This document shows positions 1,236 to 7,200 of a stretch of 64,000 bases of DNA, piece by piece. The DNA comes from Rebecca billardiae RCC1528. Lineage: Eukaryota; Protista; Haptophyta. Both the position numbers and the translations under genes were made by a program. How positions within the stretch are numbered: position 1 is the first letter of the stretch; each line of letters starts with the position of its first letter. The notes beneath the pieces are model-generated. The model was not told the origin of the DNA. It made no database searches and saw only the letters and a list, made by a program, of their open reading frames with translations. The stretch covers positions 496,001 to 560,000 of the forward strand of contig OZ251234.1 in the NCBI GenBank assembly GCA_965240325.2. Reading direction: 5' to 3'.

Positions 1236-3948
1236 TCAGTCGGCGCCGCCGCCCGTCGCCAGCGGCAGCTCGGCCGCGCGCCCGCTCACCGGGAGCTGCT
1301 CCACAAAGCGCGCGGTCACGCTGAGCGTCTCGGCGACGGGGTTAGGGTCGAGGTACGCCGTGGCCTCGGCGGGCAGCCCGCGCGCGCGCAGCGCCTCGAA
1401 CGTGTCCTCCCGCGCCGTGTACTCGAGCAGCACCGCGCGCGCGCCGAAGCGGTGGAAGAGGCGCGTGTCGTGCAGCCTCACCAGCAGCCCGTCCACGCGC
1501 AGCCAGAAGCGGAGGAGCACGAACCAGCAGCTCGGCATCACGCGCACGCGCGCGCTCAGCTGCGCGACGCCGTTGTCGTCGAGCTCCGACTCGAAGAGGT
1601 GCACCTCCTCGTTCCACAGGATCGGCTCCCGCCGGCGCAGCAGCTCGTAGTCGATGCCCTCGCCCGGCGCGGCGGGCTGCGGCCGGGCGCGAGACAGGCC
1701 GCCGCCGCCGCCGCCGTCCGCGCCGCCGCCATCCGCGCCGCCGCCGGAGCCCGCCCCCTCGCCGCACGCGTACGCGTAGGAGTACGAGCCCCTGTACGTG
1801 GTGGAGAAGGTCCAGTCGGAGGCCTCGACGGGCGAGGCGTCGACCTCGAGGTGCTCGATGTCCGCCGCGAGCCGGCTCAGCCGCTCGCTCCACGCGCCGG
1901 CGGCGGGCAGCTTGAGCGGCGACGGGTCAGGCGCGCGGCCGTCGGCGTGCGGCCGGCTGCCGTCTGGCGCGAGCACGGCGCCGCGCAGGGCGTCGAGGGC
2001 GCAGAGACGGATGCGCAGGCCGAGCGGGCGCGCGGCCGCGTCGCCGGGCGGCGTCGTCGGCGCCGGCGGCTCGAACTCGAGCGTGAGGTGCGCGTCCGGG
2101 AAGACCATCTCCGGCAGCTGCGCGCGCTCGCCGAGCGCGGCGCCGAGCGCGCGCAGCTGCGCCGCGTTGGCGAGTGGCGCGCGCGCTGCGTGCACGTGCC
2201 AGCCGTGCATGCGGATGCCGCTGTCGCCGGGGTCGAGCTCCCACGCGCCGGGGCCGGCGAGGGGGTGCGCGGGCACGGGCTGCGCGCTGGGCGCGATGGC
2301 CGCGGGCACGGCCGGCGCGACCGCCGCCACGGGCGCCGCCGCGCCGGCCAGCACCGGCGCGGCCGGCGCGCCGCCGCCGCCGGCCGCGGCCGCGGCCGCG
2401 GCGCGCGCGCGCGCGCGCGCGGCCGCCGAGCCCGTGTGCTGCGGCGCGGCGCTCGCCGGCGTGCCCCCGCCGAAGAGGCGGCCGACGAGCTCGACGATCG
2501 ACGTGTGCTGCGGCGGCGCCATCCCGCCCATCGGCATCGCGCCGGGGAAGGCGGTGGGCGGCATGGCGGCGCACGCGCCGCCGCCCAGCGCGGGCGCGCT
2601 CGGCTGCGGCTGCGGCTGCGAGCGCGGCGGCTGCGGCGGCGGGCGGAAGGGGAGCGTGCGGCCGAAGAGGAGGTGCTGCGCGACGGGGAACTTACCGAGC
2701 ACCTCCAGCCGCCACAGCTGCACCAGCCCGCGCGCCGCCGTCGGCCAGTCGCGCGCCATCTTGCAAATGTCGCACAGGATGGGGCACGCCTCCTGCAGCG
2801 AGCAGCTGCGTGCTTTGGTCGCCTTGGCGTGCGCGACGGCCGAGAGGAAGTGGGTGCGCTGCGCGAACATGTCGACGAGGCCGCCGCCCCCGCCGCCCGC
2901 CCCGCCGTCCACGTCCACGACCACCGTCTTCGGCGTGCGCACGTGCGCGTGCCCGATCAGCTGCGCCGCGCCCCACGCGAACGGCAGCATCACGTAGTCG
3001 TCCACGCACCACACGCCGTGCGAGCCTGCGGGCTCGAGGTTGAAGAGCGAGGTGAGCGCGCGGACGAGGCGGGCGTACGCGGGGAAGATGGCGCAGCCGA
3101 TCGCGACGAGCGCGGCGCGGTCCGTCGACCACGCGTACTCCGGGCGCACGCCGTCGCCGACACCGCCGCCGCCGCCGCCGCCGCCGGCCGCGCCCGCGTC
3201 CGCGGGCGCGCCGCCGCCCGCGCCGCCCGCGCCGCCGTCGGTGCGTAGGCAGCCGCGCTTGGCGGCGGCGAGCAGCAGCATGCAGAACGTGGCCTCGTGG
3301 CCCGTGCCGTAGTCCAGCCGCGCGCGCGAGCCGAACGAGTCCACCCAGTACGCGCGCAGCTCGGCGGCGAGCGCGTCCGGACCCTCGCTCGGCGGCCGCG
3401 CGGGCGGCTGGTGCGCGGGCTGGGCGGCGCCGCCGCCGCCAGCCTCGGCCTGCGCGGCCGAGCCGGGGCCCTCGGCCTCGGCGGCGAGCGTGCGCATGTC
3501 CTCGAGCGCGCGCGCAGCCATCGCGTCGTACCACTCGCGGTACGCCGGGTCGCCGAACCGCGCGGCCGCGCGCGCCGCCTCGCTGCGCGGCTGCGCGCTC
3601 GCCTCCGCCGCCAGCCGGTCGAGAGCGCTCACGAGCAAGCGCGCGCCGACTGCGGCGCGAGGCGCGCGCGGGCGGGGTCGGAGCGCGGGGCTGAGGACGG
3701 TGGGCGGCGGCGCGTCGCGGTGGCGGGGCTTCGAGCCGCGGGCGCGCGGGGTCGCGCCGCGCTGCGCCGCGCGCACCGGAGGTGGCGAGCGCGGCATCGT
3801 TCTCGACGCCGCGGATCGCATCGCCGACCGCCTCGGCGAAGGCGCAGAGCTCGACGCAGGTGGGCGAGGCGAGCCAGGCGTGCACGTCCTCGTCCGAGCC
3901 GATGGTGCGCGCGGCGGGGGGCATCGACATGGCGGCCGGCGGCTGCAT
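1236..3948 (-). CDS. Fusion of PTPA (PP2A phosphatase activator, Rrd1/Rrd2-like) and TIP41/TIPRL; exons 3948-3777 and 3649-1236
   Basis: PTPA motifs RFGDPAYREW, SFGSRARLDYGTGHE, LEPAGSHGVWCVDDY and EVLGKFPVAQHLLFG (to about 2646). TIP41 motifs LPEMVF, DWTFSTTYRG, IDYELLRRREPILW and LFESELDDNG..RVRVMPSCWFVLLRFWLRVDG..RLHDTR (about 2222-1290). A GT-AG intron at 3776-3650 joins exon 1 in frame. Confidence 0.9.
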
Positions 3949-4214
3949 CGTCGGCGGCGGAAAGGGAGGTCGAGAGAGTACGCGCACGCCGATGGCGGCT
4001 GGAAGCGCGCGTCTGGTCTTGCGTGACTGTCTTGTGTCCGGGTTCGAAGTGACCATCTGAACAGCGCGTCTATTCGAGAGGCCTCGTGACTGTCCTCATG
4101 AAGAGACGACGCTATCCCTCCCAAGCGGGTTTGATTTCGTGCTTGAAAGGCGAGCGCCCCCGCCGCGAAGCACGGGCGGCCGCGCCATCGCTCGACGCGC
4201 ACGCCAGCGGAGCG

Positions 4215-7200
4215 ATGTGGGCGCGCCCGGGCGCGCTCGCAGCGTGCGTCGCGCTGGCCTTCGCCTTCGGCTGCGCGCACGCCCGCTCGCCCGCCTCGCT
4301 CGAGGACACGCTCTCGCACCTCGAGTACGCGCGCCTCTTTGACGCCTTCCACTCGTGGGCGCGCCGCCACCACCGCACGTACCCGACGGCGGCGAAGGAG
4401 CGATCGGCGCTCGCGGCGTTCTACCTGGTGCGTGGCGCTTTCCAGAGCTGCTTTGCTTCGGCGCGCGCACGCCGCGCCGCCGCGCCCACGCGCGCCCACG
4501 CGCGCTCACGCGCGCAGCGCGCGCGCGCTCACGCGCGCGCGCCCGCAGAACCGCAAGGCCGTGGCCGAGTGCAACGCTAACTCGGCGGAGAGCGGCTTCA
4601 TCTGCAGCATGAACGGCTTCTCGGACGAGACGCACGCGCAGTTCCTCGACGGCCGCCTCCGCGACTTTGGCGACTACGACAAGGGCTACTCGAAGGCGGG
4701 CACGCACCCGGTCAAGGACACTCTGGGAAACACGCTCGCGCCGCCGCCCGGCCGCATGGATTGGGTGGAGCGGGGCAAGGTGACGCCCGTCTCCGACCAG
4801 GTGCGCGGCGCGGCGCGTGCGTCGGCGCGGGCGCTGCCCCGACGCACCCGCCCTGCTCGCACGCCGCCTGGCTCACCCGCGCGCCGCCGCCGCCGCCGCC
4901 GCCGCCGCTGCCGCCGCGCCGCCTGCCCGCTCGCGCGCACGCTCGCGCGCACGCTCGCGCTCGCGCGCGCCGCGCCGCGCGGCGGCGCAGGGCGCGTGCG
5001 CGTCCTCGTGGGCGTTCGCCGCCGTGTCGTCGCTCGAGAGCCTCAACGCGATCATGGGCCGAGACCTGGTGCACCTCTCCGTGCAGCAGATGCTCAGCTG
5101 CGACGGGCACGAGCACGAGAAGGGCTCCGAGTGGCGGGTGCGCCGCCGGCCGCGCGCCCGCCACGCGCGCGCCGCTCGCCCCCGGTGGGGCGGGACGAGG
5201 CACGTGCGCGGCGCTCGCGCGCGCGTCGGCGCTCGCGTCGGCGCCGATCTCCGCCCTCGGCCGCGGCGCGCGGCGCCTCGGCGCACACCCGCCGTGCAGG
5301 CGTGCGCGGGAGGTCTGCCACACAACGCACTCGGCTGGGTTCAGAAGCATGGCGGACTTTCAAGGGCTTCGGCCTACTCGCCCTACCTCTCGGGGAACAC
5401 GTCGGCGGACATGCGCTGCCTGTGCTGCGGCGGCACGTTCGGGCTGTGCGCGGGGCGCGGCTCGGTGGGCGGCGCGCACACGCGCGAGTGCGAGCGCGAG
5501 GTCACGTGCGGCGGTTACTTCGAGGTGCCGCACGGTGCGCGCGCAGTTGCGCCGTTGCGGCGCTGTGCGCGCGGAGCCGCGCGCGCGCCGGCCCGCCCCG
5601 AGCGCGGCGGAGCGGGGGCGGCGCGCGGCGCGCGGCGCGCGGCGTGCGGCGTGCGGCGCGCGGCGCGTGGCACTCCGGCCGCGCGCGCCCACGCCGGCTC
5701 GCCGCGCGCCCCCGCTGCCGCCCCGTGCGCGCGCGCGTGCGCAGACGAGGGCGCGCTGCTGGATGCTGTCTCGCAGCAGCCGGTGGTCACGGGCGTGGAC
5801 GCGTCCGCGCACACGTTCATGCTGTACCGCTCGGGTGTGTACTCGGCGGCGGGGCACGGGTGGAGATCGCACGAGATCAACCACGCGCTGCTCGTCGTCG
5901 GGTACGGCGAGGAGGACGGGGTGAAGTACTGGAAGGTGCGCGCGCGCCGGCACGCGCACCGCGCAGCGCGCGCCCGCGCAGCGCGCGCTCACGTTGCGCT
6001 GCCGCCACGGCCGCGCGCTGCGCGCGTGCGCGCGCGCGCGCCTGCGCGTGCCTGCGCGTGCGCGCCGCCTGCCTGCCTGCCCCTGCCCCGCCTCTCTGCC
6101 GCGCGCAGCTCAAGAACAGCTGGGGCACGGACTGGGGCGAGAACGGCTTCCTCCGCCTCAAGCGCGGCGAGCGCGAGCTAGGCGTTGGTGCGCGCCGCGC
6201 GACCGCCGCCGCGCGACCGCCGCCCCCCGCGGCAGCCGGCGATGCGCCCGCGCGCCCGCGCGCGCGCGCTCCGCCGCGCGAGCGGCGGCGCCGGCCTCTC
6301 ACCCGCGCGCGGCGCCCTCGGCCGCGTGCGCGCGGCCCTCGGCGCGTGCAGCCTCGTACTCCGTCTACCCCTCCACGCCGACAGTGCCGCTGCAGTGCGC
6401 GGCCGCGGCGGAGGGCGACGTGCAGTTGCTTGCCTACCCGCGCGGCGTGGTGACCACGTTTACGCACGGCGCGTGGCGCGCGCTGTGCGCGGAGGACAAG
6501 CACGTGCGCGAGCGCACCGGTGCGTGCGCGCGGCTGGGCGTGTGCTGCGACGCGCGGCGCGCGCCGGGCTGCGCGCGCCGCGCGCTCCAGCCGGCGAGCG
6601 CTGTGCACGCGCGCGCGCGCCGTGCGCCGCGCGCGCCGCCCGCCCGCCCGCCCGCGCGCGCCGCCCGCGCGCGCGCGCCGCCCGAGCCCAGCTCTCCCGC
6701 GGAGGCCTGCCATGAGGCGAGCCCCGCGCTCGCCGCCCCCTCGCGCGCGCGCGGCGACCGCGCGGTTGCGGCCGGTGCGCGCAGGCGGCCTCGTGTGCAG
6801 GCAGCTGGGCTACTCGCACGCGCACAAGGTCGACGACGTCAAGACGGCGCGGGCGCACGCGCTTACAGCTCCGCAGGTGCCGCGCGCGCCCGCGGCCGCG
6901 CGCGCGCGTGCGGCTGCTGCGCGCGCGGCGTGGAGGGGGGCGGGTGGGCTTGGCGAGGCTCGGGCGTGTGGGAGCAGGGCGGCGCGCTGAGCGCTCTGCG
7001 CGCGCCCCGCTGATCCGCCCTGCCCGTGCGCGCTGCGCCCTCCGCCCCGCCCGCCGCCCGCCCGCAGCTGCGCTGCTCCTCCACTGCTGCCTCGCTCGTC
7101 CAGTGCGACCCGATCGGCGCGGCGGTCGACAGCGGCGCCGACCCGTGCCCCTCGGGCGAGATCATGGAGGTGGAGTGCGAGGGCGCGAGGCCGTCCGACG

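What the first reader, a model, noticed from the sequence alone, without database searches (positions are those of the whole stretch)
1236..3948. PTPA-TIP41/TIPRL fusion: PP2A activator and inhibitor/recycler in one polypeptide
Seen: a complete PTPA domain and a complete TIP41 domain in one stop-free frame. They are joined by a Pro/Ala/Gly linker of about 140 aa (about 2645-2225) with no AT-rich spacer of the kind found at most gene boundaries in this window. Established: in yeast, animals and plants these are separate genes. PTPA (Rrd1/2) is the ATP/Mg-dependent chaperone that activates the PP2A-family catalytic subunit; TIPRL/Tip41 binds the catalytic subunit's C-terminal tail and active site, inhibits it and, with alpha4/Tap42, disassembles holoenzymes in TOR signalling. 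Inference: this is a Rosetta-stone fusion that could hand the catalytic subunit directly from the latent/recycling state to reactivation. I do not know of a described example.
Basis: partly seen in the sequence, partly recalled or inferred. Interest (0 to 1): 0.85.

Follow-up and report, generated by a model that had tools for sequence, protein, structure and literature searches.

The report
Fused PP2A activator-inhibitor gene (PTPA-TIP41)
This very GC-rich alga has one real gene that joins the protein that switches the phosphatase PP2A on (PTPA) to the protein that switches it off and recycles it (TIP41/TIPRL); the same fusion occurs in at least 19 sequence clusters from other protists, sits unremarked in public databases, and I found no paper describing it.

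Summary
The gene lies on the minus strand, 3948-1236, and encodes 861 aa. A 57-codon first exon in another frame is joined by a 127-nt GT..AG intron to one long exon. That exon carries most of PTPA, a 133-aa linker and a complete TIP41 domain.

At 80-90% GC a stop-free linker proves nothing. Three other results show it is translated:
- All 139 linker codons end in G or C, continuing the codon pattern of both domains.
- Complete transcripts from other protists carry the same fusion.
- A short linker motif is conserved in every fusion examined.

An exhaustive search of 1.84 billion representatives found 19 clusters, always in the order PTPA then TIP41. Named sources include a centrohelid and a thraustochytrid. 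In both domain trees a single clade of fusion proteins is not rejected.

The residues needed for PP2Ac binding are kept in both domains. Published structures show that the two domains compete for the same surface of the catalytic subunit. The fusion therefore most likely works as a tethered toggle or hand-off device; this mechanism is inferred, not shown.

No RNA data exist for this organism. Four literature searches found no description.

The parts
3777..3948 (-). Exon 1: start codon ATG at 3948 and 57 codons plus 1 base. It encodes the N-terminal helices of the PTPA domain.
   Evidence: Gene model. Matches residues 11-47 of P0179 (E 2e-11) and 11-54 of P0001 (E 3e-6). GC1/2/3 is 0.70/0.58/0.97.
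3650..3776 (-). Intron of 127 nt, GT..AG, phase 1. The donor is tccg|gtgcgc and the acceptor ccgcag|tc.
   Evidence: A frame change is required between exon 1 and the main ORF. Splicing here restores the frame and rebuilds a Val codon. Codon periodicity is weaker here (0.88/0.81/0.93). The exact borders are not confirmed by RNA.
1236..3649 (-). Exon 2: the rest of PTPA, the linker, the TIP41 domain and the stop codon (1238-1236).
   Evidence: Single open frame. Pfam hits to both families.
2643..3948 (-). PTPA (PP2A phosphatase activator) domain, aa 1-393, interrupted by the intron. Motifs: RFGD 3560-3549, DYGTGHE 3314-3294, LEPAGSHGVW 3038-3009, KFPVAQH 2693-2673.
   Evidence: Pfam PF03095, E 6.8e-53. 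PDB 2ixn, 4lac, 2hv6 at E about 1e-28. The predicted fold matches 2hv6, 4lac and 2ixn with TM 0.71-0.75. Human F100, A204, V209 and D213 are conserved.
2244..2642 (-). Linker of 133 aa (aa 394-526), rich in Pro, Ala and Gly and predicted to be disordered.
   Evidence: GC3 is 1.00 over 139 codons in the same frame as both domains. AlphaFold pLDDT is below 50 except at the motif.
2469..2501 (-). Conserved linker motif SIVELVGRLFG (aa 441-451). It is the haptophyte-type form of the family-wide motif D-x-[LF]-x-[KRT]-Y-F-G.
   Evidence: Conserved in P0001 and P0002/P0179. The KYF(G)-type motif is present in every other fusion linker examined (17 rows). It is absent from 52 stand-alone TIP41 N-termini and 50 stand-alone PTPA tails. 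AlphaFold predicts a short helix at pLDDT about 60.
1239..2243 (-). TIP41/TIPRL domain, aa 527-861. Motifs: LPEMVF 2117-2100, DWTFSTTY 1817-1794, GIDYELL 1658-1638, RVRVMPSCWF 1550-1521, HDTRLFH 1472-1452.
   Evidence: Pfam PF04176, E 3.8e-39. PDB 5w0w, 5d9g at E about 5e-27. Fold TM 0.81-0.91 to TIPRL structures. Tail-cleft residues I136, R173, F180, R184, D198 and R200 are identical, K171 is R and M196 is L.

Best explanation
One gene (minus strand, 3948-1236, one 5' intron) encodes an 861-aa protein. An intact PTPA domain is tethered to an intact TIP41/TIPRL domain by a disordered 133-aa linker that carries one conserved short motif.

Shown here:
- Both domains are present and keep their PP2Ac-contacting residues.
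- The linker is coding.
- The architecture is conserved, always PTPA then TIP41, in a family found in haptophyte-type algae, a centrohelid, a thraustochytrid and unnamed protists. The data are compatible with a single origin.

Established in the literature: PTPA is the ATP/Mg-dependent activation chaperone of the PP2A-type catalytic subunit. TIPRL binds the unmethylated tail and active-site region, inhibits, and helps dismantle holoenzymes. The two bind overlapping surfaces and compete.

Inferred (about 40%): because both domains cannot sit on the same catalytic subunit at once, the fusion acts as a tethered toggle. A subunit captured or decommissioned by the TIP41 end is re-bound in cis, at high local concentration, by the PTPA end and reactivated. 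This fixes the two activities at 1:1 and couples recycling to reactivation. The conserved YF-containing linker motif may gate this step.
For: - Domains: Pfam, PDB sequence matches and fold matches only to TIPRL and PTPA structures.
- Functional residues: PTPA F100, A204, V209 and D213 (PMC3915903). TIPRL I136, K171(R), R173, F180, R184, D198 and R200 (PMC4973239).
- Linker coding: GC3 is 139/139 in frame.
- Orthologous fusions: P0001, P0002 and P0003. Seventeen both-domain representatives, plus fragments P0059 and P0139 (19 clusters) and the truncated fusion P0081, among 1.84e9 representatives, all in the same order.
- Single mRNAs in relatives: MMETSP and EukProt complete ORFs.
- Single genomic ORFs: L002, L004, L005, L006.
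- In L001 (74% GC linker) the reading frame has 0 stops while the other five frames have 1-2 each.
- The linker motif is family-wide and specific to the fusion.
- Holding the fusion proteins as one clade gives a better likelihood than the free search in both domain trees (AU p 0.82 and 0.99).
- Competition of TIPRL and PTPA for PP2Ac: PMC5741625.
Against: - No RNA or protein data exist for this organism. The only run found holds 6% of the sampled words and is not RNA, and laying it gave one identical 236-nt contig and low-complexity matches.
- The intron borders are predicted, not observed.
- An internal promoter or proteolytic cleavage that releases separate proteins cannot be excluded.
- AlphaFold gives no confident contact for the linker motif (pLDDT about 60) and no inter-domain information.
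- Whether the genome also has stand-alone PTPA or TIP41 genes could not be tested, because only this window was available. It holds no second copy.
- The hand-off mechanism is untested anywhere.
Confidence: 0.8

Rival explanations
1. Two adjacent same-strand genes (PTPA, then TIP41 starting at the Met in IRMHGW, about 2210) that only look fused, because 80-90% GC DNA rarely contains stop codons or because the assembly has an indel in the linker.
For: All three frames of the linker are open in the window apart from one TAA. A Met lies close to where stand-alone TIP41 proteins begin. There is no RNA evidence from this organism.
Against: - GC3 is 100% in exactly the domain frame across the linker, unlike the intron and flanks.
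- There is no GC dip inside the gene.
- That Met is Leu in P0001 and P0002.
- The linker motif is conserved.
- The same fusion is seen in complete transcripts and in uninterrupted genomic ORFs of at least 19 clusters.
- A stand-alone PTPA gene would have no stop codon.
Confidence: 0.04
2. The fusion gene is real, but the cell mostly uses separate proteins. These would come from an internal transcription start, an alternative transcript, or proteolytic cleavage in the disordered linker. In that case the fusion only secures co-expression and 1:1 synthesis.
For: The linker is long and disordered (pLDDT below 50) and varies from 61 to about 200 aa among family members. The two domains compete for one site, so free domains would behave like the canonical proteins.
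Against: A conserved linker motif and an invariant domain order in every fusion cluster found argue for selection on the joined polypeptide. No conserved internal Met. No cleavage signal is known.
Confidence: 0.12
3. The fusion is translated as one chain but the two domains act independently on different catalytic subunits (for example PP2A versus PP4/PP6) or as a bridge between two phosphatase molecules. There would be no cis hand-off.
For: TIPRL binds PP2Ac, PP4c and PP6c (PMC4973239). The long flexible tether would allow two subunits to be bound at once.
Against: Nothing tested here argues directly against it. It does not explain the conserved linker motif any better than the hand-off model does.
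Confidence: 0.25

Closest known systems
PTPA / PPP2R4 / yeast Rrd1, Rrd2 (Ypa1, Ypa2); PDB 4LAC, 2HV6, 2IXN
   Same: Full-length Pfam PTPA domain. The DYGTGHE, LEPAGSHGVW and FPVAQHxxFG motifs are present. PP2Ac-interface residues F100, V209 and D213 and the ATP-interface residue A204 are conserved. The predicted fold has TM 0.71-0.75.
   Different: Known PTPAs are stand-alone proteins of about 320-450 aa. This one continues into a linker and a TIP41 domain, and it carries Gly/Ala-rich insertions (aa about 195-235).
TIPRL / yeast Tip41; PDB 5W0W, 5D9G
   Same: Pfam TIP41 domain. The cleft that binds the PP2Ac C-terminal tail is conserved (I136, R173, F180, R184, D198, R200). Fold TM 0.81-0.91.
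   Different: Known TIP41 proteins are stand-alone, about 270-360 aa. Here the domain has no start of its own and is preceded by PTPA and a linker. T138 is Tyr and M196 is Leu. There is a Gly-rich insertion at aa about 690-720.
Unannotated PTPA-TIP41 fusion proteins in public databases: UniRef100_A0A7S2R8T0 (Mucochytrium quahogii), EukProt EP00299 Pterocystis sp. P015529, NCBI KAH9257290.1, MMETSP Transcript_5009
   Same: Same domain order, same kind of disordered linker with the YF motif, and the same clade in both domain trees. P0001 and P0002 are 50-51% identical to the window protein.
   Different: The window protein and its two close relatives have a longer linker (about 130-200 aa) and a variant motif (IVxLVxxLFG instead of DxLxKYFG). 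The database entries are named only 'PP2A activator' or 'hypothetical protein', and no paper was found that notes the fusion.

Membership tests
PTPA (Pfam PF03095) | Profile match above the curated threshold over the whole domain | tested here: met
   180.5 bits against a cut-off of 27, in two stretches, the better covering profile positions 153-293. The N-terminal part is in exon 1, which is homologous to the orthologues' N-termini. The orthologues match profile positions 1-292.
PTPA (Pfam PF03095) | Residues at the PP2Ac interface (F100, V209, D213) and the ATP interface (A204) defined by mutagenesis in PMC3915903 | tested here: met
   All four are identical in the HMMER alignment to 4lac_B. 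The offset of +15 between chain index and published numbering was checked on all four residues.
PTPA (Pfam PF03095) | All-helical PTPA fold | tested here: met
   The AlphaFold model matches 2hv6, 2ixm, 4lac and 2ixn with target TM 0.71-0.75 and E 3e-11 or weaker (3e-11 to 5e-8).
PTPA (Pfam PF03095) | ATP/Mg-dependent activation of the PP2A catalytic subunit | not testable with these tools
   Needs biochemistry.
TIP41/TIPRL (Pfam PF04176) | Profile match above the curated threshold | tested here: met
   134.4 bits against a cut-off of 25, profile positions 36-173 of 174.
TIP41/TIPRL (Pfam PF04176) | Cleft residues that bind the PP2Ac C-terminal tail (I136, T138, K171, R173, F180, R184, M196, D198, R200; PMC4973239) | tested here: met
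   Six are identical, K171 is R and M196 is L (conservative), and T138 is Y. Alignment to 5w0w_B, with the +8 offset checked on all nine residues.
TIP41/TIPRL (Pfam PF04176) | TIPRL beta-sheet core fold | tested here: met
   Target TM 0.81-0.91 to 5d9g, 5w0w and 5w0x, E down to 5e-17.
TIP41/TIPRL (Pfam PF04176) | Binding and inhibition of PP2A, PP4 and PP6 catalytic subunits; cooperation with alpha4/Tap42 | not testable with these tools
   Needs biochemistry or genetics.
PTPA-TIP41 fusion family (defined here) | Both domains in one ORF, PTPA first | tested here: met
   Window gene model. The order is the same in all 17 both-domain representatives and in the added fragments.
PTPA-TIP41 fusion family (defined here) | Conserved [KRTQ]-[YL]-F-(G) motif in the linker | tested here: met
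   The window has GRLFG inside SIVELVGRLFG. The motif is present in every fusion linker examined (20 rows) and in 0 of 52 plus 50 stand-alone termini.
PTPA-TIP41 fusion family (defined here) | Groups with other fusion proteins in trees of each domain | tested here: met
   The window forms a 99% supported trio with P0001 and P0002. A single clade of all fusions is not rejected and has a higher likelihood than the free tree (TIP41 AU p 0.82, PTPA AU p 0.99). These are quick trees, unrooted, and deep support is weak.
PTPA-TIP41 fusion family (defined here) | Expressed as one mRNA and one polypeptide in this organism | not testable with these tools
   No RNA run holds the locus. Complete single transcripts are shown only for relatives.

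The most novel reading that the evidence does not exclude
The fusion is an ancient self-contained PP2A recycling module: one polypeptide that strips, holds and reactivates PP2A-family catalytic subunits. It would have arisen once and would be shared by Haptista and labyrinthulomycete stramenopiles, by descent or by transfer. The fusion-specific YF linker motif would be a built-in mimic of the catalytic subunit's DYFL tail. It would occupy the tail-binding cleft of the TIP41 (or PTPA) domain in cis and so gate which domain engages the phosphatase. That would be a regulatory principle not known for PP2A biogenesis.
Probability: 0.15. Interest if true: 0.75.

Novelty: new variant of a known kind. 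Interest (0 to 1): 0.55.

Why it matters
PTPA and TIPRL are usually treated as opposing, separately encoded regulators of PP2A biogenesis, and structural work shows they compete for one surface of the catalytic subunit. A conserved natural fusion of the two, with a fusion-specific linker motif, indicates that in several protist lineages activation and decommissioning are coupled on one molecule at fixed 1:1 stoichiometry.

This gives PP2A researchers a natural single-chain system for testing whether the catalytic subunit is handed directly between the recycling and reactivation steps. It also gives them a candidate short motif to test as a tail mimic.

For annotation, it shows that entries named only 'PP2A activator' in protist data hide a second domain. 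It also shows that prokaryote-style gene callers split such genes.

Tried and rejected
1. RNA evidence from the organism. The look-up of sequencing runs returned one non-RNA run with 6% of the sampled words. Laying it gave one identical 236-nt contig (1713-1948) and low-complexity matches, which says nothing about the linker.
2. 'No stop codons' as evidence. Rejected, because all frames of the linker are open at this GC content. Replaced by codon-position composition.
3. GTAAGT at about 2694 as a splice donor. Rejected: it encodes the conserved G-K-F of the PTPA C-terminal motif.
4. ESM Atlas feature search. It returned only stand-alone PTPA clusters at sub-threshold scores, so it was uninformative.
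5. AlphaFold docking of the linker motif. Two models (the window protein and the Mucochytrium protein) give only a pLDDT of about 60 for a short helix, so no confident contact can be claimed.
6. Earlier notes of this scan. No note mentions PTPA, TIP41, TIPRL or PP2A.
7. Stand-alone paralogues. Only this window could be searched, and it holds no second copy. Domain-only database searches found stand-alone relatives at no more than 36-38% identity over most of the query, none attributable to this organism.
8. Organism identity. 'Haptophyte-type alga' comes from earlier scan notes and was not verified here.
Full report
**What is in the sequence**

The window is extremely GC-rich, 0.71-0.90 across the region. 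On the minus strand an ORF runs from 4499 to 1236. Pfam finds PTPA (PF03095, E 6.8e-53) and TIP41 (PF04176, E 3.8e-39) in it.

The ATG at 3948 and the next 57 codons are in a different frame (the ORF 2692..4056). A 127-nt GT..AG intron (3776-3650, phase 1) joins them to the main frame and rebuilds a Val codon, giving an 861-aa product. Exon 1 is homologous to residues 11-47 of P0179 (E 2e-11) and 11-54 of P0001 (E 3e-6). This supports the splice. The exact borders lack RNA confirmation.

The layout is:
- PTPA: aa 1-393
- linker: aa 394-526 (2642-2244)
- TIP41: aa 527-861
- stop: 1238-1236

GC dips only outside the gene, at 3900-4200 and 800-1000. A cathepsin-like gene diverges from about 4213 on the plus strand.

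**Is the linker really coding?**

At this GC content an open frame is not evidence: all three frames of the linker are open except for one TAA. Codon-position composition is evidence. In the frame shared with both domains, GC1/GC2/GC3 of the linker is 0.85/0.75/1.00, so all 139 codons end in G or C. The domains give 0.77/0.60/0.97 and 0.79/0.56/0.97. The intron (0.88/0.81/0.93) and the flanks (about 0.62-0.74 at every position) lack this pattern.

The Met in IRMHGW that could start a separate TIP41 protein is Leu in both close orthologues.

**Relatives**

A length-restricted search with the fused query found three proteins carrying both Pfam domains (P0001 801 aa, P0002 811 aa, P0003 717 aa). 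Pfam confirms full-length PTPA plus TIP41 in each.

The exhaustive HMMER search of 1.84 billion representatives gave 3093 hits. Among the best 150, 17 carry both domains. Two more (P0059, P0139) are fragments that begin with the last residues of PTPA, which gives 19 clusters. P0081 is in addition a truncated member of a cluster that holds 698-757-aa fusions. The order is always PTPA then TIP41.

Sources:
- P0001 is identical in length to an MMETSP transcript with a complete ORF (Transcript_5009) and lies in the same cluster.
- P0030 is Mucochytrium quahogii (UniRef100_A0A7S2R8T0, MMETSP0098, complete ORF).
- P0026 is a complete ORF from the Pterocystis sp. transcriptome in EukProt.
- P0037 is NCBI KAH9257290.1, labelled Batrachochytrium salamandrivorans.
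- P0029 comes from assembly GCA_048222815.1.

Pterocystis is a centrohelid (Haptista) and Mucochytrium is a thraustochytrid (Stramenopiles). Genomic contigs L002 (ATG at 760, 818 aa), L004, L005 and L006 carry the fusion as one uninterrupted ORF between unrelated neighbouring genes. In L001, whose linker is only 74% GC, the reading frame has no stop while the other five frames have one or two each.

Single mRNAs and single ORFs with this architecture therefore exist in several lineages. For the window's own organism no RNA run was found.

**One family?**

In the TIP41 tree (96 rows) all 20 fusion rows fall in one weakly supported group, together with two stand-alone sequences whose cluster includes Chondrus crispus TIP41. 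In the PTPA tree, 13 fusions plus the truncated P0081 form a 95% clade. The window trio (99%) and the long-branched P0036 sit elsewhere without strong support.

Constraining all fusion proteins to one clade gives a higher likelihood than the free search in both trees: AU p 0.82 for TIP41 and 0.99 for PTPA. A single origin is thus compatible with the data but not proven. The trees are quick searches and unrooted, most rows have no taxon label, and only the best 150 hits were sampled.

**Are the domains functional?**

Sequence matches to solved structures are strong:
- PTPA chains 2ixn, 4lac and 2hv6 at about 1e-28
- TIPRL chains 5w0w and 5d9g at about 5e-27

The AlphaFold model (mean pLDDT 67.6; domains mostly 80-95) hits only TIPRL (target TM 0.81-0.91) and PTPA (0.71-0.75) structures.

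PTPA residues whose mutation abolishes PP2A binding (F100, V209, D213) or ATP-dependent activation (A204) (PMC3915903) are all identical.

TIPRL residues lining the cleft for the PP2Ac tail (PMC4973239) are identical at I136, R173, F180, R184, D198 and R200. They are conservative at K171 (R) and M196 (L), and changed at T138 (Y).

**The linker motif**

The window, P0001 and P0002 share [ST]-[IL]-V-x-L-V-x-[RQ]-L-F-G in an otherwise unalignable linker. Every other fusion linker examined has D-x-[LF]-x-[KRT]-Y-F-(G) at a comparable position, and the two forms look homologous. No such motif occurs upstream of the TIP41 core in 52 stand-alone TIP41 proteins, nor downstream of the PTPA core in 50 stand-alone PTPAs.

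AlphaFold models a short helix there at pLDDT about 60, between stretches below 40, in both the window protein and the Mucochytrium protein. This does not establish docking.

The motif's Y-F resembles the DYFL tail of PP2Ac and the LYFQ peptide found in the TIPRL cleft (PMC4973239). The idea that it mimics the tail is my speculation.

**How it most likely works**

Established: PTPA stabilises and activates PP2Ac with ATP/Mg. TIPRL binds the unmethylated tail and active-site region, inhibits, and promotes holoenzyme decommissioning. [quoted passage not shown]

Inference: the two domains of the fusion cannot occupy one catalytic subunit together. A flexible tether therefore makes them an intramolecular toggle. 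Release from one end favours capture by the other, at fixed 1:1 stoichiometry, which couples recycling to reactivation. I put this at about 40%. Independent action of the two ends, or mere co-expression, remain open.

**Comparison and novelty**

Each domain is an ordinary member of its family. The joined architecture with its linker motif is the new element. It already exists in public sequence databases under uninformative names. Four full-text searches found no paper that mentions a natural PTPA-TIP41 fusion; the hits for 'fusion' concern tagged constructs. The paper library is incomplete, so a description elsewhere cannot be excluded.

I rate it a new variant of a known kind with moderate interest. 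The functional link between the two proteins is already known, so the Rosetta-stone inference adds little. The fusing of an activator to its competitor, the breadth of the family and the fusion-specific motif are nevertheless worth a specialist's attention.

The scan had not noted this fusion before.

Noticed in passing
window 4213-6500 (+): A papain-family (cathepsin L-like) protease gene with a signal peptide and an I29-type propeptide, interrupted by introns. It lies head-to-head with the fusion gene, with about 265 bp between the two start codons. The scan had already noted it (s1-341133).
   Followed up: no
window about 3240-3120 and about 1760-1670 (-): Gly/Ala-rich low-complexity insertions inside both folded domains (aa about 195-235 of PTPA, aa about 690-720 of TIP41). 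The orthologues lack them and AlphaFold leaves them disordered. They look like GC-driven expansions in surface loops.
   Followed up: partly
protein cluster of P0081: One 90% cluster mixes 264-285-aa proteins called 'TIP41' with 698-757-aa fusions. Prokaryote-style gene calling on metagenome contigs splits or truncates this eukaryotic gene, so fusions are under-counted and some 'stand-alone' TIP41 entries are fragments.
   Followed up: partly
L005 (GCA_021556665.1, JAKFGG010000017.1) 3001-4896: The fusion protein KAH9257290.1 is labelled Batrachochytrium salamandrivorans. In both domain trees it groups with unnamed metagenome fusions (P0003, P0032), inside the larger fusion clade that also holds the Mucochytrium (thraustochytrid) protein. 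It also sits among compact, intron-poor genes. The taxon label may be worth checking.
   Followed up: no
L003 2-1861 (+): The gene just upstream of the fusion gene in this ENA metagenome contig has only a weak, sub-threshold match to the cysteine-rich region of TMEM135 (E 5.7e-4, 21 bits against a cut-off of 27). Only 72 bp separate the two ORFs.
   Followed up: no
window 1713-1948: The only public run that holds any of this locus (X1) contributes a single 236-nt contig, identical to the window, inside the TIP41 domain. All other matches are low-complexity GC repeats.
   Followed up: yes
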